The notes under the pieces: model-generated
What the model was told of the DNA's origin: nothing
What the model saw: the letters and a program-made list of their open reading frames with translations, nothing else
Databases searched by the model: none
Position numbers and translations under genes: made by a program
DNA from: Prasinococcaceae sp. CCMP 1430
Taxonomy: Eukaryota > Plantae > Prasinodermophyta
Reading direction: 5' to 3'
Assembly: GCA_013416795.1 (NCBI GenBank)
Contig: RQSC01001348.1
Location: 7,699 to 66,546 of the forward strand
DNA: 58,848 nt
Shown: positions 3,691-56,368 of the stretch, piece after piece
How positions within the stretch are numbered: the first letter of the stretch is position 1
Layout: each line of letters starts with the position of its first letter

Positions 3691-4629
3691 TTACTTCGCC
3701 ATGGCGGCGCGCACGGCCTTGTTGCGCTTCACCTTGGCGACCATCGCCTTGTACCTGTCGAAGTCGGTCATCTTCATCTTCGCGGCCTTCTTCGCGATCT
3801 TCTTCCCCCAGTTCGACGCCGCGAAGGTGCCCTCAACGTCCGCGCTGTCCCACGCGGCCTTGAGCTCCTCCTTGCTCGGCGTCTTGCCCACGGTGATCAC
3901 CTGATCGGTGAGGCCCAGGCGCTTGAAGTTGGCCTGGGAGCGCACCATGCCCGGCGCATCGACGAGGCAGCGGTTCTGGTCGATGAAGTCGACGATCACC
4001 ACGAGCTTGCCGTAGTCAGGGCCGTAGTTGACCATGGCGACGCGGCCGAGCTCCACATAGCGGCGGAAAGGCTGCGTGGGGCGAAAAATCGCGCGCGTAC
4101 GCGTGTATGTAGGTGGGTGGGGCGGGGGGCGTGTCAGAGGGCGAGTTCACAGGCGAATGCCGCACGCGGTGCGCCCGAGGGACGCGCATCCTAGGCACAC
4201 GCCCGAGTGCGCAGGGAGCGGTAACTGCCGCTGCTGCCACCCGCTGCTGCCACCCGCGGCACCGGCCGCGGCGAGCGTTGCGCGCCGCGGCGAGCCGGCG
4301 GGCGGCNNNNNNNNNNNNNNNNNNNNNNNNNNNNNNNNNNNNNNNNNNNNNNNNNNNNNNNNNNNNNNNNNNNNNNNNNNNNNNNNNNNNNNNNNNNNNN
4401 NNNNNNNNNNNNNNNNNNNNNNNNNNNNNNNNNNNNNNNNNNNNNNNNNNNNNNNNNNNNNNNNNNNNNNNNNNNNNNNNNNNNNNNNNNNNNNNNNNNN
4501 NNNNNNNNNNNNNNNNNNNNCTGCATCACGCCGCGCGCGCAAGCGCCGAGCCCCCGCCGCACGCCGCCCGCTCCTCTCCTTCCCCTCCGCCGCCTCGCGC
4601 GCGGCGCGCGCGCTGCTGGGACGTACCAT
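3691..4629 (-). CDS. RPL14: 60S ribosomal protein L14 (eL14); first exon is only the ATG
   Basis: Exon 2 (3691-4071) reads PFRRYVELGRVAMVNYGPDYGKLVVIVDFIDQNRCLVDAP...MTDFDRYK. ATG|GTACGT at 4629-4621. Intron 4072-4626 spans an N-gap. Confidence 0.95.
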
Positions 4630-11820: not shown

Positions 11821-12878
11821 TCATGCTGGCCTCCTGAGCTGCCAGAGCGCGTACGTAGCCTCCTCCTCGCCGTCGATGCTCGGGTGTGTGAGCAGCACCT
11901 CCATGGGTGCGGCATGCACGTAGCCGCGCGCCTCAAGCGTCCGCAGGAAGTCATCGAGCGAGATGCGGCCCGCTCGGCTCGCGACGAGCACCACGCCGCC
12001 CGGCCGCAGGCAGGCATCGACAGTGGCCGAGAGAGCGTCGATGGCGGCGGTGACTGCGAGGAGGCGGGAGGGGGCGCGGCGTCAGAATGCGCCCAGCCAC
12101 ATGCGTGCGAACGCCGACACGCCACGGATTGCCTTCTCGCGCGCGACGTACAGTAGTTGCAATCCGCCGCCAGGACGACGTCGCAGCCTGCCGTGCCTGC
12201 AGCGCGCGCCACGGCCGCGTCCGTCTCGCATGCAAACCAGTCAAGTTCGGTTGCTCGCATTGCGGCGAGGCGCGAGGCATCGAGCGGCCGCCGCACGGTC
12301 CCCTCGGCGATCGCGCCGCGCACGGCAGCAACGGCCTTGTCGTCGCAGTCGGTTGCGACGACCTCGGCAGCGCCTGCGAGCGCCGCGGCAAATGAAGGCA
12401 GTGCGGAGCCGCAACCGAGCTCGCACACGCGCAGGCCGGCCACTGCGCCGCGTGCGCGCTCGGTGAGGTGCCGGGCGAGCAGCAGCGCCGAGTCCCACAC
12501 GAAGACGCCGCTCGCGTCGACCTCGCAGCGCTCGCCGCCACCGATGTCGCGCGTGCGCCACACATGGCTGCGCTCGCGCCACGCTCGCTCGTACTCAGAT
12601 TCGAGACTCGCCTCGAAGGCCGCCGCAGCGCCCGCGCTACCCCAGGACGACGGCGATTGCAACGGCAACGGCGAAGGTGATGGCGACGCCGACGGCCCAA
12701 AACCGCCGCCGCCAGGGGCGCCAGCGCCGGCGCCGCTGCTCTCGCCCGCTGCCGCCGCGCTCGCCGGCACCGCGCAAGCACCCGGCGCCGCCCGCAGCCG
12801 CCGCCCGCGCCGGCGGGGGAACCGGCGGCGCGAGAGCCACACGCTGCGAAGCTGTGGATTTCGGTTGCAAATTGACAT
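11821..12878 (-). CDS. Lysine/histidine protein methyltransferase of the METTL21/METTL23 (Methyltransf_16) family, 2 exons
   Basis: GVFVWDSALLLARHL, RVCELGCGSALP, VATD, LDW and DVVLAADCNY. GTACGT...CAG intron near 12058-12151; last exon LRPGGVVLVA...RRPA-TGA. TGTAA at 11797-11793. Confidence 0.85.
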
Positions 12879-13147
12879 GCATCCATTTCACCCTTCAAAT
12901 GAACCACGAAATTAAACGTGCTTGCTTTTTGCATCATGATGGTGAGAGTCGAAAGCGCCGGCGGCGATGGCAGTTCCCCCGGGCGCGTTCCCCCGGCGGC
13001 GCACGCGCGGCCGCCACACGAGAGCCGGCGGGCGCGGCGGCGGCGGCACGCAGTGGCGGCCGCGCGGCGGCCGCGGCCGCCCGTGCCACCCGCCGGCCGA
13101 CGCGGCGCCTGCTCTGGCATACCTCCTCTCGGCGCGGCGCGCTCGCA

Positions 13148-14689
13148 ATGCACCTCCGCGTGGAGTGGGCGGCGAGCTGTGGGGCCGGTGTGAAGGACCT
13201 GGCTTGGGAGGGCGGAGGTGGCGGTGACGGCGTGCTCGTGGCGTGTATCGATGGCAGTGTGCGCCGCGCCGCCGTTGGGAACCGCAGCGGCTTCTTGGTG
13301 CTCGCGCAGGACCCGACGCGCAGCAGCGTGCGCGCGCTCTGCGTGGGCGCGGACGGCACGCTGTGCTACGCCACGATGGCGCGCTCGCTGGCACTCGGCG
13401 GGCGGGCGCATGCGCGCGCACACGTCGACTATATCACATCGCTCGTGCCGCTGCCCGCGGCGCGCAGCACACAGCCAGTGCTGGTAGCGACGGCCTCCGT
13501 GGACGGTAGCGTGAGCGTGTGGGCACCCTCCGCGAACGCGTGCGTGGGCACGGCTAGCACATGCGCTGGCGTGCGCTCCATGTCCGCGCTGGCCGAGTGC
13601 GGCGGTCTACCGCCGCGCGGCGATGCCAATGAGGTGATGGTCGCCTGTGGCGGCCGCGGTGGGCTGGTAGGCGTGTGGCTTGGCGGCGGGGAGGCCATGT
13701 GGACGGTGGTCGGGCACACCGCCGCGGTGATGTGCGTGGCATTCGTGGGCAGCGAGCAGGAGGCCACGGACGAGGCCGACGGCGAGACGGAGGGCGAGCT
13801 TGCGCGCACGAGGTGCCTAGTGGCCCTCACAATGACCAGCGGGGAGGCCGTCACGGCCTGGCTCAATGTCTCAAGCGCCAACAAGCAGAGTGGGCAAGCG
13901 GTCGCGCTCGAGGAGCATGCACGTATGGGTGGCCTTATCGACGCGACGTGTGCGCGCATGCGCGTGTGCCCCCCATCGTGCTTGGCGTCAGGAGGAGAGG
14001 ATTGCGTGGTGCGACTGTGGGGGTGGACAGACGGCGCGCCGCTCGCGGTGCTCGCAGGCTTCAACGCGCCGGTGGAATGCATGATATCTCGAGACGTAGA
14101 TGCGCGCGCAAATGGGCGCGCGGCTGTGGCAGTGGCCACGCTCGCTGGGGAGGTCAGCATGTGGGCGCAGAGGGAGGGCGAGGATGCTCACGTCGCCGAG
14201 GACGCATGCGCGGCGGCTATGCGCGCAGACCTCACTGCGACGGGACTAGCGCACGCGCGCGCGGCAGCTGTGAGCGCTGATGCCACCACAGCGGCAGGAG
14301 CGCTCCTCCTCGATTGTGCGTGGGCGTCTGAGGTCGCGGCAGCCGCCATGCTGCCCTTCGAAGCTGCCGACAACCTCGCACGGCGAGAATTCGAGTGCCC
14401 GGTGTGCCTCGGCGCTGTGGACACAGATGCGCCATGCGTGCAGCTCGCGTGCGGCCACGCTTTGCATGCGGCATGTGCGCTTCCCCTGATTGGCGAGCGG
14501 TGCCCACTATGCCGTGCGTTGTGTGCGAGCGGCTGCATCGGCGCCGGCACCACCGCGCAGGGTGTCGCGCGGCTTCTGTGCATGCGCGCCGACGCCGCAC
14601 GCGGAGAGAGGGTGCTGGTGGAGGCGCAGGGCCTGCGGCGCGAACTCGCAGCCGCGCGCTCGCGCTCGCCTTCTCCCAAGTTCTTCTGA
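13148..14689 (+). CDS. Intronless WD40-repeat protein with a C-terminal RING-H2 finger (putative E3 ligase)
   Basis: WD-type repeats AHVDYITSL...ATASVDGSVSVW, GHTAAVMCVAF and LASGGEDCVVRLW. RING-H2 CPVC...CGHALHAAC...CPLC. Confidence 0.75.
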   Translation: MHLRVEWAASCGAGVKDLAWEGGGGGDGVLVACIDGSVRRAAVGNRSGFLVLAQDPTRSSVRALCVGADGTLCYATMARSLALGGRAHARAHVDYITSLVPLPAARSTQPVLVATASVDGSVSVWAPSANACVGTASTCAGVRSMSALAECGGLPPRGDANEVMVACGGRGGLVGVWLGGGEAMWTVVGHTAAVMCVAFVGSEQEATDEADGETEGELARTRCLVALTMTSGEAVTAWLNVSSANKQSGQAVALEEHARMGGLIDATCARMRVCPPSCLASGGEDCVVRLWGWTDGAPLAVLAGFNAPVECMISRDVDARANGRAAVAVATLAGEVSMWAQREGEDAHVAEDACAAAMRADLTATGLAHARAAAVSADATTAAGALLLDCAWASEVAAAAMLPFEAADNLARREFECPVCLGAVDTDAPCVQLACGHALHAACALPLIGERCPLCRALCASGCIGAGTTAQGVARLLCMRADAARGERVLVEAQGLRRELAAARSRSPSPKFF

Positions 14690-14896
14690 GGCAGCACGCG
14701 AACGCCTCCGTGTACAGTATTAATTTTTTGCTACAGTACGAATGTCGCAAGTGTCTGCCGCGACGAGTTTGCAGCGGGGCCGCGGTGTGGACAGGCGGGC
14801 GGGCGGGCGGTTGTGGGCAAGGGGTGGGCTGGGGGGGGAAGCGGGCAGGATAGTATGGAAGTGGCTGTCGCATCATCGTCGCGAGCGCTCTCGTGT

Positions 14897-17800
14897 TTAG
14901 CGCAGGAGCACTCTCACGCCGCCCAAGCCATCGACGTCGTCGTCATTGGCGTCGGTGCATGACAGCGAGAGCTCGAGCGAGGTCGCATCTGGTGGTAGCG
15001 CTGTCTTGGCGATCGTCGCCAACAGCTCCAAAAGGTGCGTCGCCTTGCGCTCCTTGAGTTTGGGCGGCGCCATGAAGTCCATGAATAGAAGGCTGCTGCC
15101 GTACGACACCATTGACACCTCGATGCCGTACTTTTCCTCGAAGGTAGCGATCATCGCGCCGAGGGTGGCATCGCATGCGCGGAGGTCCACCTCGAGCTTG
15201 TCCCACACCGAGAAGACCTGCGTGCCCTTGGCGGTGGCCACGGCAGTGCCAGCCACGCGGCGCGGCACGCAGCACACGAGCGAGGGCAGCGCAGTGTTTG
15301 CAAAGCTGTCGCGCCGAACTGCCAGCCGCGCCCCAAGGATGGCCTTTAGGATCTCCACCGTGCCGAGAGCTGCAATGAGGGAAGTAGCCGGAGGAAGCGC
15401 CGGCGCCACCCCGGCGGCATCGCGCAGCACTTCGGCCCGCGTCGGCGGCGGGATGCGGTGATTGCGCGCGCGTAGCGCCGCGCACGCCTGCAGAAAATCC
15501 ACGTGCCAGCGCGCCCCCCCACGAGCGCGCGCGAGGGAGAGCGGCTTGAGGCGGAAGCCGACTAGCTCACCGGGCGATGGCAGTTCCTCCAGGAGCGCAG
15601 CGATGCGCGCTTCGACTGTGTCAGCCGCCTTTGTTCCTGCAACTTCAGCATCGGGGCCGTCTTCAATGGCCATCGACGAAGCTGACGCACTGAGGGGCAG
15701 AGTCTCGCTCGCGGGCGCCCCCATGTCGCCATCGGCGCTCGAGCCTCGGAGTGCACCGCGGACGGCCTCCTCGCCCGCGGTGCCATGCAGGCCATACACG
15801 TGCGCGCGCAGATTGGCCGCGGCACGCACAAAGCGGGCGTGCAATTCGTCGTTGGCATCCAGCGCAAGTGGCGTGGGGCAGCGCTTGACGCCAGCCCAAA
15901 ATGGCAGTCCTTCAGTCGTGAGCGAGTCTGGCCCAAACTTGGACAGCAGAGCGTTCACCGGTGCTTCAAAGAGCTCCTCGAAGAGCGCGGCTGCCCATGC
16001 TGCACACTCTTCGAGTGAGCGCGGCCGACTGCGCCCCAACGAGTCGCGCACGCCGCGTAGTGCTCCCTCCGCCGCCTCCGCACCGTTGCGCCCGCGCACG
16101 GCAGCAACGAATTCATCTCGCCCATGCGAGAGGTACTCGTTCACCGCGCGCGGGCGTCCGACGAAGATGTCCTCGAAGCGCTCGCGCGCCCACACGCTCG
16201 CGTGCGCCGGCAGGTACGGAAAGTTGTTCAGCACGCACAGCTGCGGCTGCGCGCGTCGCTCAGGCGGGTCAGTGCTGGCCGAGTAAGGCTCGCTCTCGAA
16301 GGGCACCGCGGAGGTCACTGAACCTAGTGCACCGTTCACACCCACGTCCACCAGATTTCGTGACTGACCGAGGCAGAGCGCGTCGGCCGCAAGACGCGCC
16401 GCAGCGCCCTCTGCACAGCTCGCGAGCACCGCTCCTTTCGTCGCCATCGCCAGGCGGACTGCGCGCAGGTCGCCGCTGCTCGCACCGCCTGATGCTGACA
16501 GAGAGGCGTCTACTGCATGCGCGCTGTGCAGTGGCGCGCACGGCCCAATGCTGCGCACAGCCTCCACCGCCGCCGCCGCCCGGGTGACGCTCTGATCGCC
16601 GATCGCGTGCAGCACCTGGCGGCTGAGATTGCATTCGTCCGCATCGTCTCCGTCGACGATGGTGAGATCCCCCCCGCGCGCGCCGTCCGCGCCCACGCCG
16701 AGCAGCGCGAGATTCTTGATCACCTCGCACCCCACCGCGGCGGCGCCGGCAACCACCACGCGAGCGCTCGCAAGCGCCGCGCGCGTGCCACCCCCAAGGA
16801 GTGCATCCTGCGCCGCGAGAGCCGGATGGATAGGCTGCGGCGAGGGTTCCTGCTCCGCAGACTGTGGCGCGTGCCCAACCTCAGACAGGAGTTCGGCCGC
16901 GTGGTAGGTGAACCACTGATGCAGCGGCTGGTGCACGCGCGTGACAGCCTTGACCGCCTCCGCGGCGGCCACCGCGCCAGCCACCGTGGCGACGGGTGGC
17001 AGCGCATAGCCAGCACCGTTGTTCTCCATCGCACAAGCAGCGCAGGCCGCCAGGGCCGCGATGCCGGGCGACGAGCCCCCAGCGCCATCGCCGCCCTCAC
17101 AGCCAGCCGAAGCATGCGTGCGCGCGAGCTCAAGGGGATTGCCACCGCGCGCGCAGTGTCGCAACACCGCGATCACCTCACGATCGGCGTCTGTGCTGAG
17201 GTCACCAAGCCTGCCAGGCGCAAGCGCCTCGTCGAGAGACACATGCGATCCGCACACGTTCCCTCGCACCTGCCGCAAGTAGCCGCTACCCGACACATAC
17301 GCTTGGGTGCCCGCCGCGGCGGCGGCCGCGACGCCACACCCGCCCTCGCATTGCACGAGCAGCGTCGCGCGGCCAGTGACGGTGCAGGGCAAAGGCCCGG
17401 CGGCGTTGAGGGCGGCACCAAGCTCAAGCGATTCTCCATCCGTGCCTGCAGCCTCAGCTGCGTTGGCGCCCTCTGCGTCAACGGATGCGCTCTCGCAGGC
17501 AACAAACTCGGCGAGATCGCCGTCCTCCAAGCCGTGGCCACCCTCGTCTGCAATGGTGACGGTGAGCGTCACGCTGCCGCCCGCGGCTGCTCCACCGGTA
17601 TCCGGCGTGGCATGGATGCTCTCAACTACACTCATGCGCGCGCTGGCGGATGCGTCTCCGTGTGACGCGATCGCAGGCCGCTCGTACTGGAAGCGCGCAC
17701 CGAAGTCGGCGAACACAGCACAGAGAGCGCCTCGTGCACACGCGGCGACATACGGCACGCCGTGCGTCCGGCAAATCGACGCGCGCGCGCGGCCTGTGTC

Positions 17801-18271
17801 ACCGAGTGCGGCGCCCGTGTCATCGCATGCCACCACGACGTCGATCCCCGCCAGCATGTCGCTCGTCAGCCCCACCGCCTCCATTCTCTCTGCTCCCTGT
17901 TGCCCCGGGTCGCCGGAGAGTACGTCGATGGTGCACGTGGGATCGAGCACCGCCAGGCGGGCGACGTAAGCTGCAACGGCGTCACCATCGGCATCGGCCC
18001 TGCGGGAGAGGAGCGTGCACGCGCGCGGCCTGCCGTTGAAGCTCAGCGCGACCCTGCCGACACCCGAGAGCACGAGCGCCGTGGCGGCCTCGGCGCCGGT
18101 CGCCTCACCTGCGCCAAGCACGAGAACGGCCGCACGGCGCGCGGCGAGTGGCGCGGCCTGGCCGAGCGCGAGTGCTATGCGCGCGTGCGCGAGCGGAACG
18201 TCCGAGGCGCCACCGCCGTCGACAGCACCATCGCCACCCGCCTCGCAATCCACCACCATCGGGGACGCCAT
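14897..18271 (-). CDS. Divergent, intronless ubiquitin-activating enzyme E1 (UBA1-like) with IAD, FCCH, AAD, SCCH and UFD domains
   Basis: GHGLEDGD (FCCH), QPLHQWF, GCEVIKNLALLG, NLSRQ, PFESEPYSASTDPP, catalytic PQLCVLNNFP...WARERF and UFD FSVWDKLEV...EKYGIEVSMVSYGSSLLF. Confidence 0.88.
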   Translation of the reverse strand: MASPMVVDCEAGGDGAVDGGGASDVPLAHARIALALGQAAPLAARRAAVLVLGAGEATGAEAATALVLSGVGRVALSFNGRPRACTLLSRRADADGDAVAAYVARLAVLDPTCTIDVLSGDPGQQGAERMEAVGLTSDMLAGIDVVVACDDTGAALGDTGRARASICRTHGVPYVAACARGALCAVFADFGARFQYERPAIASHGDASASARMSVVESIHATPDTGGAAAGGSVTLTVTIADEGGHGLEDGDLAEFVACESASVDAEGANAAEAAGTDGESLELGAALNAAGPLPCTVTGRATLLVQCEGGCGVAAAAAAGTQAYVSGSGYLRQVRGNVCGSHVSLDEALAPGRLGDLSTDADREVIAVLRHCARGGNPLELARTHASAGCEGGDGAGGSSPGIAALAACAACAMENNGAGYALPPVATVAGAVAAAEAVKAVTRVHQPLHQWFTYHAAELLSEVGHAPQSAEQEPSPQPIHPALAAQDALLGGGTRAALASARVVVAGAAAVGCEVIKNLALLGVGADGARGGDLTIVDGDDADECNLSRQVLHAIGDQSVTRAAAAVEAVRSIGPCAPLHSAHAVDASLSASGGASSGDLRAVRLAMATKGAVLASCAEGAAARLAADALCLGQSRNLVDVGVNGALGSVTSAVPFESEPYSASTDPPERRAQPQLCVLNNFPYLPAHASVWARERFEDIFVGRPRAVNEYLSHGRDEFVAAVRGRNGAEAAEGALRGVRDSLGRSRPRSLEECAAWAAALFEELFEAPVNALLSKFGPDSLTTEGLPFWAGVKRCPTPLALDANDELHARFVRAAANLRAHVYGLHGTAGEEAVRGALRGSSADGDMGAPASETLPLSASASSMAIEDGPDAEVAGTKAADTVEARIAALLEELPSPGELVGFRLKPLSLARARGGARWHVDFLQACAALRARNHRIPPPTRAEVLRDAAGVAPALPPATSLIAALGTVEILKAILGARLAVRRDSFANTALPSLVCCVPRRVAGTAVATAKGTQVFSVWDKLEVDLRACDATLGAMIATFEEKYGIEVSMVSYGSSLLFMDFMAPPKLKERKATHLLELLATIAKTALPPDATSLELSLSCTDANDDDVDGLGGVRVLLR

Positions 18272-19244
18272 GCGTGCGTGTGCGCGCACTCACCCGAGAC
18301 CGCGCGGAGGGCCGCCGCGTCGCCTCGGCCACACCTACCCCCGGGACGCTCCCACCTCTCCAACCGCTCAACACCACCCGTGTCACGCCCACGCGTGCGC
18401 CGCCCCTCGCACGTGCGATCCGCGCCGCCCCTCCCTCACTACCCCCGCGCGCCGCCCCTTGCGCGCTGCGCTGCCGCGGCGCAGCGCGCGGAGTGTGGTG
18501 CCGGGCAGCGCCACTTTTTCAAGGATGTGAGTGCGTCGGCGCGGATGTGGGCGAGGGCGCCGGGCGGGGGGGGGGGGGGGGGGGGGGGGACGGGGGGGTG
18601 AGAATTAGCCTGGGCGTGTAACGCACTGTTGTACATCGTCGTTTGCACGCGTGTACATGTGTGTGTGTGTGTGTGTGTGTGGTTGTGCGTGTCCGTGTGG
18701 GTGTGGCGCTGTGGCGCTAGAGGGTGCCCTGCGCGGCCGTAGCTCATGGCGGCGGGCGGCTCTCGGCTCGCAAGCCGGCCGGGCATGGCATGGCTGAGAC
18801 AAAGCGCGCCTCAGCGACGGCGGCGCAGCTCTGTCGGCCTCCGCGTCGCGCGGAGGACCTGCTCCCGCCGGGGGTGAGCGATCCGTTGGCGGACTCCGAG
18901 GGCGTGGGCACGCGCCAGGCGCGCGCGGTGGGTGGCGGTGGCGGACGGCATGGCACGCGCGACCTGGGGGCGGCGCGCTGGGAAGGAGAGGATGCTATTT
19001 TACTGGGCGCGCAGGGCGCGTGGGCGTGCACTCTGTCCCAAGGCTCTACGATAGAGGTACAGTGATGGGGAACGACGCGGCGACCCAGCTCGGCACGCCG
19101 GCGACCTAGCGCCTGCGGCCTGAGCCTGTGGGCACGAAGGCCCCGCCGTGGCGCGCAGCGGCGTAGCCTGCGCGCAGCCCTCGCACGAACGCGAGGACGT
19201 CCTCGGCCCGGCCGCTCTCGGCCCCGTCGGCGCCCCAGTCTTGC

Positions 19245-21476
19245 ATGAACAGCCGCACCTCTGCGAGCACCTGCGCGGCGGCGGCGGCGTGCGCGTCCTC
19301 CTCGCCGTCCGTGCCCTCGCTGGAGGTGTCCCCCGAAGCGATCGCTGCGGCCGCCGCGGCGGCGCCCGCCGAGCCGCCCCTGCGGCCCGACGTCTTGCGC
19401 ACGCCGCTGCGGCTGCCCGAGCGCCCCGAGCGCCCCGCGCGGATTGCGCCGCGCGCGCAGGGAGCGGCGCGGCGCCTGCCTGTGCAGGCGTCGGGTGTTG
19501 GGCTCGGCGTCCAGCGGGCTGACGAGCCGCCCGCCCTCCCAACAACCCCGTAACACCCCCTCGCCCCCGACCCCGTCCCCAATCCAACCGACCCCATCCC
19601 CAATCCTCGCCCACCCGCCCGCTGTCGTCCGCCCGCCTCCCTCCGACGCGCCGGGCGCGCCTCGCCGCCGCGCAGACACAGAGGTGGCGACCACCAAGGT
19701 CGCGACCGCCGCCGGCACGCTGGAGAAGGTCCTCGACCGCGTGTCGAGCACCCACGAGAACGGGCGGTGCCCCGCCGAGCGGCTACAGAACCTCGTGTTC
19801 GTCACGAGCGAGGTGGCGCCGTGGTCGAAGACGGGCGGGCTCGGCGACGTCTGCGGCAGCCTGCCGCCCGTGCTCGCGGCGCGCGGGCACCGCGTGATGG
19901 TGGTGGCGCCGCGATACGGCTGCTACGAGGACGCCATCGACACCGGGGTGGAGGTGACGATCTGGCTGAGCGGCGCACACCACACGGTGCGCTTCTTCCA
20001 CTGCCAGCGCGGCAACGTCGACTGGATCTTCGTCGACCACCCGGGCGCGTACCTGCGGGCCGGCAATCCCTACGGCGACGAGATGGGAACGTTCGGCGAC
20101 AACCAGTTCCGATTCACGCTGCTCTCCATGGCGGCGCTCGAGGCGCCGCTCGTGGTGCCCACGGGCAAGGACGGCCTTCCGTACGGCGACGACATCATGT
20201 TCGTCGCCAACGACTGGCAGGCGGCGCTCGTTCCGACGCTCCTCGCCACCAAGTACCGCCCCCACGGATGCTACTGGCAGGCGCGCACGCTGCTCATCAT
20301 CCACAACCTGGTGCGTGGCGTGGTTGCTGCGGTCGCTGAGCGCTCGCGGCGCGCCGTTGCCGCCGGCAGCCCGCACGCGCGCGCCGAGCCCGCGCGCGCC
20401 GAGCCCAAGCGCGCCGAACCCGCGCGTGCGACGCGCTGACACGCGAATGGCCGCGCTGCGCCCCCGGCGCCGGCTCCCAACAGTTTCACCAGGGCGTCTT
20501 CCCGCCCGGCACCTTCGGCGACCTGGGGCTGCCGCCCGAATGGTACGGCGCCCTCGAGTACCAGTACCCCGAGCACCAGCGGCAGGGCTCGTACGAGGAG
20601 GAGGGCAGGAGCCTCAACTACCTCAAGGCCGGCCTCACCACCGCCGATCGCATAGCGACCGTCTCGCCGGGCTACGCTTTGGAGATGACCTCGCCCCTCG
20701 GCGGCTGGGGGCTCGACGGCACCGCCGGCTCGCGCTGGGAGAAGCTCGACGGCGTGTTGAATGGCATCGACGAGAAGGAGTGGAACCCGGCCACGGACAA
20801 GCTCATCGCTGCCAACTACACGGCGCGTACCTACGCCAACGGAAAGGCGGAGTGCAAGGCGGCGCTGCAGCGTGAGATGGGGCTGCCGGAGAACCCGGAG
20901 GCGCCGCTGTGCATCTTCATCGGACGACTGGATCCGCAGAAGGGAGCCGACATTGTCATCGAGGCGGCGCCGTGGATCGCCGACCAGGGCGCGCAGCTTG
21001 TCATGTTGGGGACGGGGCAGACGCACCTTGAGCACGGCATGGCGGCAGCTGAACACGCGCGCAGGGACGCCGTGCGTGGTTACGTGGGCTTTAATGTCGC
21101 GCTCGCGCACCGCATGATGGCCGGGGCCGACATCTTGCTGATGCCCTCCCGCTTCGAGCCGTGTGGCCTCAATCAGCTCTTCGCGCTCAAGTACGGCACC
21201 GTGCCCATCGTGCATGCCACGGGCGGGCTGAGCGACAGCGTGCGCCACTTCAACCCCTTCGAAAACTCGGGCACCGGCTGGACCTTCGATGACTGCTGCA
21301 CCGACGCGCTCATCCACGCGACGGGCTGCGCCATCGACACATATCGCCGCTTCCCCGACAGCTGGAAGGGCATCTTGCGGCGCGGCATGGGGACCGACGT
21401 GAGCTGGCGGCAGGCCGCCGAGAAGTACGAGCAGCTCTTCGTTTGGGCCAAGGCAGACCTGCCGCAGTGCAGCTAA
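19245..21476 (+). CDS. SS1: Soluble starch synthase I (GT5), at least 3 exons; the N-terminal exon is uncertain and may start as far up as 18746
   Basis: SEVAPWSKTGGLGDV, NPYGD..GTFGDNQFRF, MFVANDWQAALVP.LLATKYRP, IHNL|FHQG, GRLDPQKG and MPSRFEPCGLNQL. Introns 19494-19675 and 20311-20483. Confidence 0.93.
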
Positions 21477-28467: not shown

Positions 28468-29225
28468 CAAACGCAGTGCCCGAAACCCTCGTACACGCCA
28501 GGCGGCGCAGGAGCGGGCGGCGGGCGAGCGCGAGGGGGAGCAGACGCTCCCCGAGGGGCGGGCAATTGAGGGCCAGCTCCCACGTCGCGGCTCGCCCGAC
28601 GGCGCGCGCGTGGACCCCCTCCCGTCGCGCGCCCGCGCCCGCTCTCCGTCCTCAGCGCGCGCGCGCGCCAGNNNNNNNNNNNNNNNNNNNNNNNNNNNNN
28701 NNNNNNNNNNNNNNNNNNNNNNNNNNNNNNNNNNNNNNNNNNNNNNNNNNNNNNNNNNNNNNNNNCCCGCGCGCGCGACGCGGCGCGCGCGCGCGGCGTC
28801 GCATTTTGGGTTAGTAAAAGGGTCCATATTTGGGGCGATTCGGATGCGTTTTGACCTCGTGCGGCGGCGCGGCGGCTGGGGCCTCCGAGCGCGCGCGCGC
28901 GCGCGCGCGATCCGCCCCGCAGACCAGACGGGTGGCCCGAGGATTCCCCGCGCGGCGGGAATTCGGATCCCTCCCGTGCACGTTGCGACGTCAATCAGAA
29001 CTCCCCTCGAACCCGCAGAAGCAATTTCGAAGGAGGCTGCGATCCTCCCATCGAAGCAAATGGAGGGTTGCGGTTGAAATTTGGGGTAGGGTTTATTGTT
29101 TTTTTGGCGGCTCGCAGCACTGCACCGGTGTGGTGTCGTGCGCGCGCGCGCGCGCGGCAGCGGCGCGTCGGCACACCGCGCGCGCCGGGCGCCCCCGCCG
29201 CCCTTCTCCTCCCGCGCCGGGAGCG

Positions 29226-34415: not shown

Positions 34416-35518
34416 TGTCGCGTTCGAAAATTCGAAAAACGAACCCTGTCAATATAAACCGTAATACGACTCGTGTGCTGCACCGAATTCAACACAGTCA
34501 AATCGAGACCCACAGAGGCCCACAAGCGCGCTGCAACCGTAACCCCAAATCCTGAACCCTACACACGTGTATTCCGAACCTCAAAAAAAAAGTGTGTGTG
34601 TGTGCGGGAAAACGGCGCCGCCGCCGCCGCGGCCACTCCCACCCCCCCACACAACGCAGAGGGGAGGGGCAGGGGCGCGTGCGACGTCCCACACGCGCGC
34701 CCCGCGCGCCCCTCGGCGGCGGCCTCCCCGAGGCGCTGCCCCCATATCCCCCCCCCATCCCCCCCCCGTCGCGGCCCGCGCGCAGGGGCCCGGCCCGCGC
34801 NNNNNNNNNNNNNNNNNNNNNNNNNNNNNNNNNNNNNNNNNNNNNNNNNNNNNNNNNNNNNNNNNNNNNNNNNNNNNNNNNNNNNNNNNNNNNNNNNNNN
34901 NNNNNNNNNNNNNNNNNNNNNNNNNNNNNNNNNNNNNNNNNNNNNNNNNNNNNNNNNNNNNNNNNNNNNNNNNNNNNNNNNNNNNNNNNNNNNNNNNNNN
35001 NNNNNNNNNNNNNNNNNNNNNNNNNNNNNNNNNNNNNNNNNNNNNNNNNNNNNNNNNNNNNNNNNNNNNNNNNNNNNNNNNNNNNNNNNNNNNNNNNNNN
35101 NNNNNNNNNNNNNNNNNNNNNNNNNNNNNNNNNNNNNNNNNNNNNNNNNNNNNNNNNNNNNNNNNNNNNNNNNNNNNNNNNNNNNNNNNNNNNNNNNNNN
35201 NNNNNNNNNNNNNNNNNNNNNNNNNNNNNNNNNNNNNNNNNNNNNNNNNNNNNNNNNNNNNNNNNNNNNNNNNNNNNNNNNNNNNNNNNNNNNNNNNNNN
35301 NNNNNNNNNNNNNNNNNNNNNNNNNNNNNNNNNNNNNNNNNNNNNNNNNNNNNNNNNNNNNNCGCGCGGCCCCTGCCGCGGACCCCATGAGCGCGTCGCC
35401 CGCGCGGCACGCGCTCCCCCCCCTGCGCGCGCGCGCGCTGTGGCGCCAACGAGGCACACAGCGCCCTCGTCTCCCCAACTTAAACCCTCTCACACCTAAA
35501 ACAGAACCCAAAACAGAA

Positions 35519-44159: not shown

Positions 44160-44977
44160 GGTGGCCGGGCGCGCGCGCGCCGGCACGCGCGCGCGCCCGC
44201 CGCGCGCCGCCCAGGGGCTCGAGAGGCACACACACACGCACGCACGAAAGAAAAGCCCACCGGGGGGCAGCGCCCGCCGCGAGCGCGCCCGCTCCGAGCC
44301 CGAGCCTCCCAGCAGGCGACGTGCGGCGTCGCAGGCTCCCTCGGCTCCCCCCTCTCCGCCCCCCTCCCCTCCCCCCCCGCGCAGCGCGCCGCCGCGCNNN
44401 NNNNNNNNNNNNNNNNNNNNNNNNNNNNNNNNNNNNNNNNNNNNNNNNNNNNNNNNNNNNNNNNNNNNNNNNNNNNNNNNNNNNNNNNNNNNNNNNNNNN
44501 NNNNNNNNNNNNNNNNNNNNNNNNNNNNNNNNNNNNNNNNNNNNNNNNNNNNNNNNNNNNNNNNNNNNNNNNNNNNNNNNNNNNNNNNNNNNNNNNNNNN
44601 NNNNNNNNNNNNNNNNNNNNNNNNNNNNNNNNNNNNNNNNNNNNNNNNNNNNNNNNNNNNNNNNNNNNNNNNNNNNNNNNNNNNNNNNNNNNNNNNNNNN
44701 NNNNNNNNNNNNNNNNNNNNNNNNNNNNNNNNNNNNNNNNNNNNNNNNNNNNNNNNNNNNNNNNNNNNNNNNNNNNNNNNNNNNNNNNNNNNNNNNNNNN
44801 NNNNNNNNNNNNNNNNNNNNNNNNNNNNNNNNNNNNNNNNNNNNNNNNNNNNNNNNNNNNNNNNNNNNNNNNNNNNNNNNNNNNNNNNNNNNNNNNNNNN
44901 NNNNNNNNNNNNNNNNNNNNNNNNNNNNNNNNNNNNNNNNNNNNNNNNNNNNNNNNNNNNNNNNNNNNNNNNNNNNN

Positions 44978-52395: not shown

Positions 52396-54453
52396 CTGCG
52401 GGAAGCGCCGTCCAAGTCGCGATTCCGAGCGGCGCGACGCAGGCGACCGCGGCGGCACGAGGCGACGGCGCGGGGCACCGCGGCGAAGGGGGGCGGCCAA
52501 GGCAGGAATACGCAGCGGCGGAGTCAGCACACACTCGTCACGCGCACGCGCGCGGCGCGGGCGCACGCAGCAACACGCGGTCCCGCCCCTCCGCGCCTAA
52601 GCCGCCGGTGGAGCGCGCGCGCCCCACCGGCGCTCGGCGCTCGGCGCTCGGCGCNNNNNNNNNNNNNNNNNNNNNNNNNNNNNNNNNNNNNNNNNNNNNN
52701 NNNNNNNNNNNNNNNNNNNNNNNNNNNNNNNNNNNNNNNNNNNNNNNNNNNNNNNNNNNNNNNNNNNNNNNNNNNNNNNNNNNNNNNNNNNNNNNNNNNN
52801 NNNNNNNNNNNNNNNNNNNNNNNNNNNNNNNNNNNNNNNNNNNNNNNNNNNNNNNNNNNNNNNNNNNNNNNNNNNNNNNNNNNNNNNNNNNNNNNNNNNN
52901 NNNNNNNNNNNNNNNNNNNNNNNNNNNNNNNNNNNNNNNNNNNNNNNNNNNNNNNNNNNNNNNNNNNNNNNNNNNNNNNNNNNNNNNNNNNNNNNNNNNN
53001 NNNNNNNNNNNNNNNNNNNNNNNNNNNNNNNNNNNNNNNNNNNNNNNNNNNNNNNNNNNNNNNNNNNNNNNNNNNNNNNNNNNNNNNNNNNNNNNNNNNN
53101 NNNNNNNNNNNNNNNNNNNNNNNNNNNNNNNNNNNNNNNNNNNNNNNNNNNNNNNNCCCGCGCGCTCCGCCCCCGCCCGCGCGGCGCGCGCAGCCGCCGC
53201 CCGCGAAATCCACACAGAAAATATATTTGTATTCCGTCTAATTATTCATATAACGTCATTTGACACGAAGAAAAAAGTCGGTTTAGATATATTTGGATCG
53301 TCACTTTCCATACATTCGGACGCGTTTGGCCGGCGGCGGCGTGGCTCCCGCCGCCCCCTCCCCGCCGCGTGCGATTTGACCTCCCGACGCCCCCGCGCGT
53401 GGCGCCTGACCTCCGCGCCCAAAAAAGTAAAGGCAGGACCCTGCGCCCCTCAGATCACGCATCTCTCGCGACTAAATGGCTTCAAAACGTGAATGTGTAC
53501 AATACTACGTTCAGAAGAGATTAACTTTCCGGGGATGAAATGGAAGGAGACCCAAAATGAGGGGATTAGGGTTCTGCGACGCATAATGCATGCCATCATG
53601 ATGATACAGTGTGAGTACACCTATGTTTTTTGACGGCGTTTCCGGTCGAAAAATGCGGGGCCAAAAAAAAAACGAGGGAGGGCCGCGAGCTGCTGCCGCG
53701 GCGACTCCCCGACTCGCGGCCCGGCCGGGAGCGGGGCCGCGACCCCTAAGAGTCGCCCCGCGAGCGCGCGTCCACACCTGGGCAGCGAGGCGCACCCCGG
53801 GGCTGCGCCGCCCCACCCCGCTCATTTTCGGTGGTAGTAGTATTTATTTTTCGGAATTCAGCCACTGAATGTTCTCACGTGCGTAGGAGTGTGCAGAACA
53901 CAATTGGCGGAGACCCAAAAGTCGGCGGCGCGCGCGCGCCACACACACGCCGACGAACGGTAGTTGGAATTTTTGTGGAATCCCAATACGGAATCCTAAC
54001 ACAAATGGATTCCATTTCTGAGTTGATGTGTTTACACGTAATGGATTCCACTTCGCGCGAGCGGATCGGCCGCGCGCGATACGGGGGTGCGGGACGGTTA
54101 CGGCGGCGGCGCGCGGCGCGCGGGCGGCGGCGNNNNNNNNNNNNNNNNNNNNNNNNNNNNNNNNNNNNNNNNNNNNNNNNNNNNNNNNNNNNNNNNNNNN
54201 NNNNNNNNNNNNNNNNNNNNNNNNNNNNNNNNNNNNNNNNNNNNNNNNNNNNNNNNNNNNNNNNNNNNNNNNNNNNNNNNNNNNNNNNNNNNNNNNNNNN
54301 NNNNNNNNNNNNNNNNNNNNNNNNNNNNNNNNNNNNNNNNNNNNNNNNNNNNNNNNNNNNNNNNNNNNNNNNNNNNNNNNNNNNNNNNNNNNNNNGGCGG
54401 CGGCGCGCGCGGCGCGCGCGGACACGGGCGCGGAGAGCTCGGCCGTCGCTCGC

Positions 54454-55020: not shown

Positions 55021-56368
55021 TCACCTGCGCGAGGAGAGGCACTTGCTGGCTGGCTGCTGGGGCGGCGCGGGAGCGGTGGGGAGGACGTGGGGGGGGGCGA
55101 TGACGGCGGCGCGTCGTCAGCACGCGGCAGCGCGCGGCAGCGGCCCGGCACGCGGGCCGTCGCCCGCGACCGCGGCACGCGCAGCGCGNNNNNNNNNNNN
55201 NNNNNNNNNNNNNNNNNNNNNNNNNNNNNNNNNNNNNNNNNNNNNNNNNNNNNNNNNNNNNNNNNNNNNNNNNNNNNNNNNNNNNNNNNNNNNNNNNNNN
55301 NNNNNNNNNNNNNNNNNNNNNNNNNNNNNNNNNNNNNNNNNNNNNNNNNNNNNNNNNNNNNNNNNNNNNNNNNNNNNNNNNNNNNNNNNNNNNNNNNNNN
55401 NNNNNNNNNNNNNNNNNNNNNNNNNNNNNNNNNNNNNNNNNNNNNNNNNNNNNNNNNNNNNNNNNNNNNNNNNNNNNNNNNNNNNNNNNNNNNNNNNNNN
55501 NNNNNNNNNNNNNNNNNNNNNNNNNNNNNNNNNNNNNNNNNNNNNNNNNNNNNNNNNNNNNNNNNNNNNNNNNNNNNNNNNNNNNNNNNNNNNNNNNNNN
55601 NNNNNNNNNNNNNNNNNNNNNNNNNNNNNNNNNNNNNNNNNNNNNNNNNNNNNNNNNNNNNNNNNNNNNNNNNNNNNNNNNNNNNNNNNNNNNNNNNNNN
55701 NNNNNNNNNNNNNNNNNNNNNNNNNNNNNNNNNNNNNNNNNNNNNNNNNNNNNNNNNNNNNNNNNNNNNNNNNNNNNNNNNNNNNNNNNNNNNNNNNNNN
55801 NNNNNNNNNNNNNNNNNNNNNNNNNNNNNNNNNNNNNNNNNNNNNNNNNNNNNNNNNNNNNNNNNNNNNNNNNNNNNNNNNNNNNNNNNNNNNNNNNNNN
55901 NNNNNNNNNNNNNNNNNNNNNNNNNNNNNNNNNNNNNNNNNNNNNNNNNNNNNNNNNNNNNNNNNNNNNNNNNNNNNNNNNNNNNNNNNNNNNNNNNNNN
56001 NNNNNNNNNNNNNNNNNNNNNNNNNNNNNNNNNNNNNNNNNNNNNNNNNNNNNNNNNNNNNNNNNNNNNNNNNNNNNNNNNNNNNNNNNNNNNNNNNNNN
56101 NNNNNNNNNNNNNNNNNNNNNNNNNNNNNNNNNGGGCGGGCGCGCGAGCGCGCGCGCAGGCGCCCTCTCCGCTCGCACGCCCCTCGCCCCTCTCCCCCGC
56201 TCCGCCCCGGCGCGGCCTAGGGGAGGGGGGGGGAGGGGCCGCGGCGCGCCTCTCTCCCCGCCCCGCTCAGGCGAGGCCAAGGAGGGGGGGAAGCCGAAGG
56301 GGCGCGTGCGGGGGCGGCGCCGCAAAGGGGTCCAGCGCCTGCTCCTCTGCGACCCCTCGCGGGGCGCG

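What the first reader, a model, noticed from the sequence alone, without database searches (positions are those of the whole stretch)
14897..18271. Full-length UBA1-like E1 with intact catalytic Cys and UFD but an apparently degenerate adenylation site
Seen, aligned by eye to canonical UBA1: the ATP-binding GAGAIG is GAAAVG (about 16730-16750). DMDTIEKSNLNRQ is DGDDADECNLSRQ. The ATP-contacting Lys (VTKLKS) maps to VTRAAA. The Mg2+-binding ALDN motif is replaced by SCAE. The YSRQ motifs are eroded. Yet the thioester Cys region (PQLCVLNNFP...WARERF, Cys at 16235-16237) and the E2-binding UFD are well conserved, and the 1124-codon ORF is uninterrupted. Established: E1s need adenylation to charge the Cys, and UBA1 is normally highly conserved. 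Inference: this is a second, neofunctionalised paralogue. It could be a pseudo-E1 that scaffolds or sequesters E2s, a trans-thiolation relay, or an E1 for an unusual ubiquitin-like modifier.
Basis: partly seen in the sequence, partly recalled or inferred. Interest (0 to 1): 0.7.

Follow-up and report, generated by a model that had tools for sequence, protein, structure and literature searches.

The report
Divergent second-type ubiquitin E1 in Prasinoderma
This marine green alga expresses an intact but very divergent relative of the enzyme that starts ubiquitin tagging; three of its normally invariant ATP/magnesium-site residues carry mild substitutions, so the site is altered rather than lost, and it belongs to a little-studied algal side branch of the E1 family.

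Summary
The gene is real. It is an intronless, expressed 1124-codon ORF (window 14897-18271, minus strand) in Prasinoderma, and it is predicted to fold as a full six-domain UBA1.

In a 124-sequence alignment only three invariant pocket residues differ, and all three changes are conservative:
- G511A, the second Gly of GxGxxG (human G477)
- K564R (human K528)

D540, D542, N548, R551, Q552, the Arg finger and Cys679 are kept. All 14 Prasinoderma haplotypes carry A/R/E. A 55%-identical orthologue keeps G/K/D. The Prasinococcus orthologue has other changes.

The protein lies outside the well-supported canonical UBA1 clade. It sits with divergent E1s of streptophyte algae, Cymbomonas, a haptophyte and metagenomes. 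In these proteins the Cys domain and the UFD are better conserved than the adenylation core, the reverse of all 406 canonical pairs.

My best reading (confidence 0.5) is a specialised E1 that is still catalytic and works with a dedicated E2. A pseudo-E1 is not excluded. I could not show that the genome also has a canonical UBA1.

The parts
14833..18343 (-). Transcribed unit (mRNA extent)
   Evidence: Contigs from two independent transcript-like runs (X1, X2) begin and end at 14833/14839 and 18343/18341. They show no joints, and the flanks have no coverage.
14897..18271 (-). Coding sequence, 1124 aa plus stop, no intron
   Evidence: ORF list. The MMETSP/UniRef protein P0309 is identical over all 1124 aa.
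17672..18199 (-). N-terminal inactive adenylation domain (about residues 25-200), keeps the Arg finger R31
   Evidence: AlphaFold model pLDDT about 90, Foldseek alignment to UBA1, and alignment. pN/pS is about 1.3 here.
16832..17671 (-). FCCH-like beta barrel, helical bundle and C-terminal part of the inactive domain (about residues 201-480)
   Evidence: Pfam does not detect it. It is predicted folded and superposes on UBA1.
16247..16831 (-). Active adenylation domain, N lobe (residues 481-675)
   Evidence: ThiF match and motif alignment.
16739..16741 (-). Ala511 codon GCC at the second Gly of GxGxxG (human G477)
   Evidence: G in 122 of 122 other representatives.
16580..16582 (-). Arg564 codon CGG at the ATP-contacting Lys (human K528)
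   Evidence: K in 119 of 123 other representatives.
16409..16411 (-). Glu621 codon GAG at the Mg-binding Asp (human D576)
   Evidence: D in 122 of 123 other representatives.
15422..16246 (-). SCCH domain with catalytic Cys679 (16235-16237)
   Evidence: PF10585, 166 bits. 68% identical to the orthologue P0002.
14900..15211 (-). Ubiquitin-fold domain (E2-binding), residues 1021-1124
   Evidence: PF09358, 74 bits. 67% identical to P0002.

Best explanation
The gene encodes a specialised, non-canonical UBA1-type E1 that is probably still catalytic. It has the complete six-domain E1 architecture and the thioester Cys. Its ATP/Mg pocket keeps most ligands, but in the Prasinoderma lineage three of them carry the mildest possible replacements (Gly to Ala, Lys to Arg, Asp to Glu).

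It belongs to a set of divergent UBA1-like proteins in green algae and in algae with complex plastids. In that set, selection acts hardest on the Cys domain and on the E2-docking UFD, and less on the adenylation core.

Inferred mechanism: it binds ATP-Mg and a ubiquitin-type C-terminal tail, adenylates that tail (perhaps slowly or with altered metal or nucleotide handling), forms the Cys679 thioester, and hands the modifier to one dedicated E2 recognised by its conserved UFD. This is analogous to the UBA6-USE1 pair or the plastid sUba1-sUbc pair.

Shown here: fold, residues, expression, selection, and position outside canonical UBA1. Inferred: catalytic activity, a dedicated E2, and the presence of a separate housekeeping UBA1 in the same genome.
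For: - **Architecture.** AlphaFold mean pLDDT 82.5 and pTM 0.89. Full-length superposition on human and yeast UBA1 with TM 0.75/0.85.
- **Pocket.** Only G511A, K564R and D621E deviate. D540, D542, N548, R551, Q552, R626, R31 and C679 are kept.
- **Fixed, not an error.** All 14 Prasinoderma sequences, including Tara Oceans metagenome contigs and the MMETSP transcript, carry A/R/E.
- **Orthologues.** P0002 (55% identical) keeps G/K/D. The Prasinococcus protein P0166 has N548S, R551Q and K564R.
- **Arg/Glu pair recurs.** It also occurs in Mesostigma. These are the only two Glu among 124 representatives, and both sit with Arg. That fits a coupled, tolerated change.
- **Selection.** pN/pS is 0.24 in the adenylation lobe and 0.24-0.47 for whole-gene pairs.
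- **Expression.** Transcript-bounded contigs in two studies, metatranscriptome fragments, and an identical MMETSP protein.
- **Position.** Outside the canonical clade (SH-aLRT 100). AU tests p = 5e-5 and p = 0.006.
- **Inverted constraint.** Adenylation-lobe identity minus the mean of SCCH and UFD identity is -3.6 to -22 in 10 non-canonical pairs. It is +6 to +36 in all 406 canonical pairs.
- **Precedent.** Specialised UBA1 paralogues with their own E2 and ubiquitin-like protein are described in PMC12412216, PMC3045029 and PMC12065787.
Against: - The second Gly of GxGxxG is invariant in every other family member examined. Three changes in one pocket could abolish or cripple adenylation.
- Most non-canonical relatives have lost one or more adenylation residues. 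The chemistry may be dispensable across the whole set.
- pN/pS of 0.24-0.47 is weak constraint for an E1, and the N-terminal 200 residues evolve almost neutrally.
- I identified no E2 or modifier partner.
- I found no canonical UBA1 of this genome with the tools available.
- The tree is unrooted and the branches are long. 'Outside the canonical clade' could partly reflect accelerated evolution.
Confidence: 0.5

Rival explanations
1. Pseudo-E1. The adenylation site is catalytically dead, and the protein is kept for its Cys domain and UFD. It would act as an E2 scaffold or sequestering factor, or as a relay charged in trans by another E1.
For: - G511A hits a position that is Gly in 122 of 122 relatives, and K564R and D621E fall in the same pocket.
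- The adenylation lobe is the least conserved catalytic part in this clade, and SCCH and UFD are the most conserved.
- Relatives show radical losses: R551 to T, S, N or Q, Q552 to G, and D542 to A, K or C.
Against: - The three changes are the most conservative possible, and every other ligand is retained.
- The sister species keeps a fully canonical pocket.
- The adenylation lobe is still under purifying selection, pN/pS 0.24.
- Family members that look truly dead (P0080, P0083, P0118, P0123, P0149) have also lost the Cys. This protein has not.
Confidence: 0.25
2. It is the only UBA1 of Prasinoderma. On this reading it is a fast-evolving, compositionally skewed orthologue that does the housekeeping ubiquitin activation.
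For: - I could not retrieve a canonical UBA1 from this genome.
- The protein is 20% Ala from a genome of about 69% GC, which inflates divergence.
- Two of three residues I recall as contacting ubiquitin Arg72 are conserved (S666, D668). That assignment is from memory.
Against: - TIGR01408 gives 361 bits against a cut-off of 750, whereas other algal UBA1s score 1000-1600.
- AU tests reject a position with green canonical UBA1 or inside the canonical clade.
- The inverted domain conservation is shared with the other non-canonical proteins. Haptophytes, one lineage in this set, are reported to have both a host and a plastid Uba1 (PMC3045029).
- pN/pS is too high for an essential single-copy E1.
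Confidence: 0.1
3. A decaying, functionless duplicate.
For: Constraint is relaxed overall, and pN/pS is about 1.3 in residues 1-200.
Against: - The 1120-1124-codon ORF is intact in 14 haplotypes and in two more species.
- It is expressed.
- pN/pS is 0.24-0.43 in every domain beyond residue 200.
- The fold is predicted with confidence.
Confidence: 0.03

Closest known systems
Canonical UBA1 (human UBA1, yeast Uba1; TIGR01408)
   Same: It has the same six-domain fold (TM 0.75/0.85). It has the catalytic Cys in the SCCH domain, a UFD, and most ATP/Mg ligands.
   Different: - Only 25-31% identical over the full length.
- Below the curated model cut-off (361 bits against 750).
- Pfam does not recognise the FCCH or 4HB domains.
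- Carries G477A, K528R and D576E (human numbering).
- Lies outside the canonical clade.
- The adenylation lobe is less conserved than SCCH and UFD.
SELMA / apicoplast sUba1 (E1AP) of algae with complex red plastids
   Same: It is a divergent UBA1 paralogue that exists beside a host UBA1 and works with its own E2 and ubiquitin-like protein (PMC12412216, PMC3045029, PMC12065787). The window protein falls among divergent sequences that include a haptophyte protein (P0016).
   Different: - It has no N-terminal targeting extension. The inactive domain starts near residue 25.
- The organism has a primary plastid.
- The grouping is model-dependent: starred under LG+G4 and unresolved under the mixture model.
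- I did not verify that P0016 and the metagenomic proteins are sUba1.
Divergent UBA1-like proteins of Chlorokybus, Mesostigma, Spirogloea, Mesotaenium and Cymbomonas (P0005, P0155, P0006, P0008, P0188)
   Same: They are green-lineage proteins that lie outside the canonical clade. They show the same inverted conservation, and substitutions at adenylation residues are frequent. Mesostigma shares the Arg/Glu pair.
   Different: - Less divergent. P0005 passes TIGR01408 with 1008 bits, and FCCH and 4HB are detectable.
- An AU test under LG+G4 disfavours an exclusive clade with the Prasinoderma group (p = 0.009).
UBA6 and UBA7 (vertebrate specialised E1s)
   Same: They share the concept of a second UBA1-type E1 with a dedicated E2.
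   Different: UBA7 lies inside the canonical clade, and UBA6 scores lower than UBA1 against this protein (215 against 307 bits). They are not orthologues.

Membership tests
Canonical UBA1 (TIGR01408 Ube1) | Score above the curated whole-protein cut-off of 750 bits | tested here: not met
   361 bits. The orthologues score 428 and 443. Wollemia UBA1 scores 1595.
Canonical UBA1 (TIGR01408 Ube1) | Six-domain architecture IAD-FCCH-4HB-AAD-SCCH-UFD | tested here: met
   AlphaFold pTM 0.89. Full-length Foldseek match to UBA1 structures. Pfam sees only ThiF, SCCH and UFD.
Canonical UBA1 (TIGR01408 Ube1) | Invariant ATP/Mg residues (GxGxxG; human D504, D506, N512, R515, Q516, K528, D576) | tested here: not met
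   Three of these residues are substituted conservatively: G477A, K528R and D576E. The rest are kept.
Canonical UBA1 (TIGR01408 Ube1) | Catalytic Cys in the SCCH domain | tested here: met
   Cys679 is in the conserved segment P-x-L-C-V-L-N-N-F-P.
Canonical UBA1 (TIGR01408 Ube1) | Branches within the clade of eukaryotic UBA1 orthologues | tested here: not met
   The canonical clade has SH-aLRT 100 and excludes it. AU p = 0.006 and p = 5e-5.
Canonical UBA1 (TIGR01408 Ube1) | ATP-dependent ubiquitin adenylation and thioester formation | not testable with these tools
   This needs a biochemical assay.
SELMA sUba1 / apicoplast E1 | N-terminal bipartite targeting signal and a host with a complex plastid | tested here: not met
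   The Arg-finger motif is at residue 31, and the transcript 5' end is 72 nt upstream of the ATG. The organism is Prasinoderma, a green alga.
SELMA sUba1 / apicoplast E1 | Phylogenetic grouping with sUba1 sequences | tested here: inconclusive
   It groups with the Diacronema and metagenomic proteins under LG+G4 (97) and is unresolved under C20. No verified sUba1 sequence was in the set.
Catalytically dead pseudo-E1 | Loss of the catalytic Cys or radical replacement of ATP/Mg ligands | tested here: not met
   The Cys is kept and the substitutions are conservative. Five other family members show the dead pattern, with both the Cys and the Arg lost.

The most novel reading that the evidence does not exclude
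Prasinoderma, Prasinococcus, early streptophyte algae and Cymbomonas retain an ancient second, cytosolic ubiquitin-type E1 lineage that has not been described. It would be the free-living counterpart of the plastid sUba1 of algae with complex plastids. It would serve one dedicated E2 or modifier, and its adenylation chemistry would be remodelled repeatedly (the Arg/Glu pair arose twice) while the Cys and UFD modules stay fixed.
Probability: 0.25. Interest if true: 0.7.

Novelty: new variant of a known kind. Interest (0 to 1): 0.5.

Why it matters
E1 enzymes are textbook examples of invariant active sites. This natural, expressed and selected E1 carries Ala, Arg and Glu at three positions that are essentially invariant, and its sister species carries the canonical residues. 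That pair is a ready-made experiment on how much the adenylation pocket tolerates.

The wider pattern could point to an unrecognised dedicated E1-E2 pathway in early-diverging green algae. The pattern is a set of algal UBA1-like proteins whose E2-docking and Cys domains are more constrained than their adenylation core. It could also bear on where the plastid-import E1 of complex algae came from.

If the protein turns out to be an ordinary, slightly slow E1, the interest is modest.

Tried and rejected
- **Word-index protein searches.** Searches with the window protein and with the Prasinococcus orthologue returned almost nothing beyond their own clusters, because the candidate cap filled up.
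- **Search for the alga's canonical UBA1.** A search seeded with a GC-rich canonical UBA1 (P0035) returned stramenopile-like and unlabelled proteins, none from Prasinoderma.
- **GC-rich candidates.** I examined P0065, P0143, P0193 and P0192 by contig, sample, GC3 and codon usage. None could be tied to Prasinoderma, and GC3 proved a poor discriminator.
- **JGI metagenome scan.** It found only an unrelated canonical UBA1 from an AT-rich eukaryote.
- **Earlier scan notes and paper supplements.** The scan's notes on this genome and the genome paper's supplements mention no UBA1.
- **Second E1 in the window.** There is none.
- **Synteny.** The neighbouring WD40-RING gene is not conserved next to the orthologue.
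- **AU tests under the mixture model.** They did not finish on 47 rows, so the reported tests use LG+G4 on 24 rows.
- **Low-GC stretches.** I considered them a possible feature and rejected that. They are runs of N.
- **Protein-atlas searches.** They gave only generic UBA1 clusters.
Full report
**The gene**

Window 14897-18289 (minus strand) is one open frame. The ATG at 18271 gives 1124 codons. No other frame in this 69% GC region exceeds about 380 codons. Pfam finds ThiF, UBA_E1_SCCH and E1_UFD, and the best solved relative is human UBA1 at E = 2.6e-90. No assembly gap lies in the gene. The window's low-GC bins are runs of N located elsewhere. There is no second E1 in the window.

**Organism and expression**

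Earlier notes of this scan name the genome Prasinoderma coloniale. I confirmed the genus independently: the 90% cluster of this protein contains a UniRef/MMETSP entry labelled Prasinoderma, and it also holds an MMETSP protein identical to the window protein over 1124 residues.

Contigs from two small transcript-like runs, from different studies, cover 14833/14839 to 18343/18341 with no joints. They leave both flanks uncovered, including the 3' end of the neighbouring gene. Two marine metatranscriptomes hold fragments. The gene is therefore transcribed and intronless, with short UTRs.

**Checking the motifs**

I aligned the protein with 123 representatives from an exhaustive HMMER search. The human numbering below comes from the alignment.

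| Position (window) | Human residue | State here | State in other representatives |
|---|---|---|---|
| 511, second Gly of GxGxxG | G477 | Ala | G in 122 of 122 |
| 564 | K528 | Arg | K in 119 of 123 |
| 621, Mg-binding | D576 | Glu | D in 122 of 123 |

The orthologue P0002 fixes the register as C-A-E-G against C-T-D-T against A-L-D-N. D540, D542, N548, L549, R551 and Q552 (human D504, D506, N512, L513, R515, Q516), R626, the inactive-domain Arg finger (R31) and Cys679 are all retained. The codons are GCC, CGG and GAG. All 14 Prasinoderma-type sequences carry Ala/Arg/Glu. These include Tara Oceans metagenome contigs and a Logan contig.

**Orthologues**

Only two other 50%-identity clusters are close.
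- P0002 (55% identical) comes from intronless marine metagenome contigs. It keeps Gly, Lys and Asp.
- P0038/P0166 is from Prasinococcus capsulatus. It has N548S, R551Q and K564R.

The three share a two-residue insertion before the Cys and the motif C-V-[LI]-N-N-F-P-Y. All three fall below the TIGR01408 cut-off (361, 428 and 443 bits against 750). A Chlorokybus relative and two canonical green UBA1s pass it. Pfam does not detect FCCH or 4HB in these three.

**Fold**

An AlphaFold model built on an 89-sequence alignment has mean pLDDT 82.5 and pTM 0.89. The N-terminal half is confidently folded. The model superposes over its full length on human and yeast UBA1, with TM 0.75/0.85. The six-domain architecture is therefore intact.

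**Phylogeny**

In three trees the canonical UBA1s form a clade with SH-aLRT 100 that excludes the window protein. That clade contains a conifer, two other green-type proteins, red algae, an oomycete, a heterolobosean, and animal UBA1 and UBA7.

Outside it, with the window protein, lie:
- divergent proteins of Chlorokybus, Mesostigma, Spirogloea, Mesotaenium and Cymbomonas;
- a protein of the haptophyte Diacronema;
- several metagenomic proteins (names).

AU tests under LG+G4 on 24 rows give these results:
- With green canonical UBA1: rejected, p = 5e-5.
- Inside the canonical side: rejected, p = 0.006.
- In an exclusive clade with the other green divergent proteins: rejected, p = 0.009.

Under the C20 mixture model the relations among the divergent groups are unresolved. 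The trees are unrooted and the branches are long. The age of the split is therefore open, and some artefact from accelerated evolution cannot be excluded.

Published work describes old paralogy in Uba1 and a divergent plastid sUba1 in algae with complex plastids (PMC12412216, PMC3045029). I did not verify that the haptophyte or metagenomic proteins here are sUba1. The window protein has no room for a targeting peptide.

**Shift of constraint**

For 406 pairs of canonical UBA1s, the adenylation N-lobe is more conserved than the mean of SCCH and UFD in every pair (+6 to +36 points, mean +21). For all 10 pairs among the divergent proteins it is less conserved (-3.6 to -22). Between the window protein and P0002 the figures are 49% for the adenylation lobe, 68% for SCCH and 67% for UFD.

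Fourteen of the 124 representatives deviate at one or more of twelve normally conserved catalytic positions (ATP/Mg ligands and the catalytic Cys). Nine of them belong to this divergent set. The other five have also lost the catalytic Cys. The Arg/Glu pair recurs in Mesostigma.

**Selection**

Five Prasinoderma haplotypes give pairwise dN/dS of 0.24-0.47. By domain, pN/pS is about 1.3 for residues 1-200 and 0.24-0.43 elsewhere, with 0.24 in the adenylation lobe. The counts are small, and pairs are not independent.

**Interpretation**

The conservative nature of the three changes argues for an altered but working pocket. So do the retention of all other ligands and the Cys, the canonical pocket in the sister species, and the purifying selection on the lobe. 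The strong conservation of the UFD and SCCH suggests a dedicated E2.

A dead adenylation site is the main rival, because the second Gly is otherwise invariant and the clade tolerates further losses.

No tool here searches the rest of the genome, and my indirect attempts failed.

Noticed in passing
window 12677-14689 (+): A WD40 repeat protein ending in a RING-H2 finger (PF13639, 31 bits), a likely E3 ligase. It converges on the 3' end of the E1 gene. It is not next to the orthologue on contig L001.
   Followed up: partly
window 19444-20439 (+): A starch-synthase-like ORF (K-T-G-G-L motif) upstream of the E1 gene. It is probably part of a longer gene.
   Followed up: no
window 4307-4520, 28672-28765, 34801-35362, 44398-44977, 52655-53156, 54133-54395, 55189-56133: Seven runs of N (3164 bases in total). 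They explain the apparent low-GC islands of the window and are assembly gaps, not biology.
   Followed up: yes
proteins P0080, P0083, P0118, P0123, P0149: Five UBA1-family representatives lack both the catalytic Cys and the Arg of the N-L-x-R-Q motif. They look like truly dead E1s. I did not look up their origin.
   Followed up: no
protein P0155/P0007 (Mesostigma viride): It shares the Lys-to-Arg and Asp-to-Glu pair with the window protein, and it has also lost D542, N548 and R551. This is an independent recurrence of the Arg/Glu pair.
   Followed up: partly
L011 (Tara contig), proteins P0311 and P0312: These haplotypes carry Cys515Phe immediately after the Gly loop, at the Cys of the GxGxxG-C-E motif. 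That Cys is common across the family.
   Followed up: no
window 17672-18271 (residues 1-200): The N-terminal inactive adenylation domain shows pN/pS of about 1.3 among haplotypes, against 0.24-0.43 for the rest of the protein. The counts are small.
   Followed up: partly
L015 9337-12466: The metagenomic relative P0022 (821 aa) is a truncated gene call. A ThiF-bearing fragment lies just upstream, so the gene probably has an intron and a full-length product.
   Followed up: no
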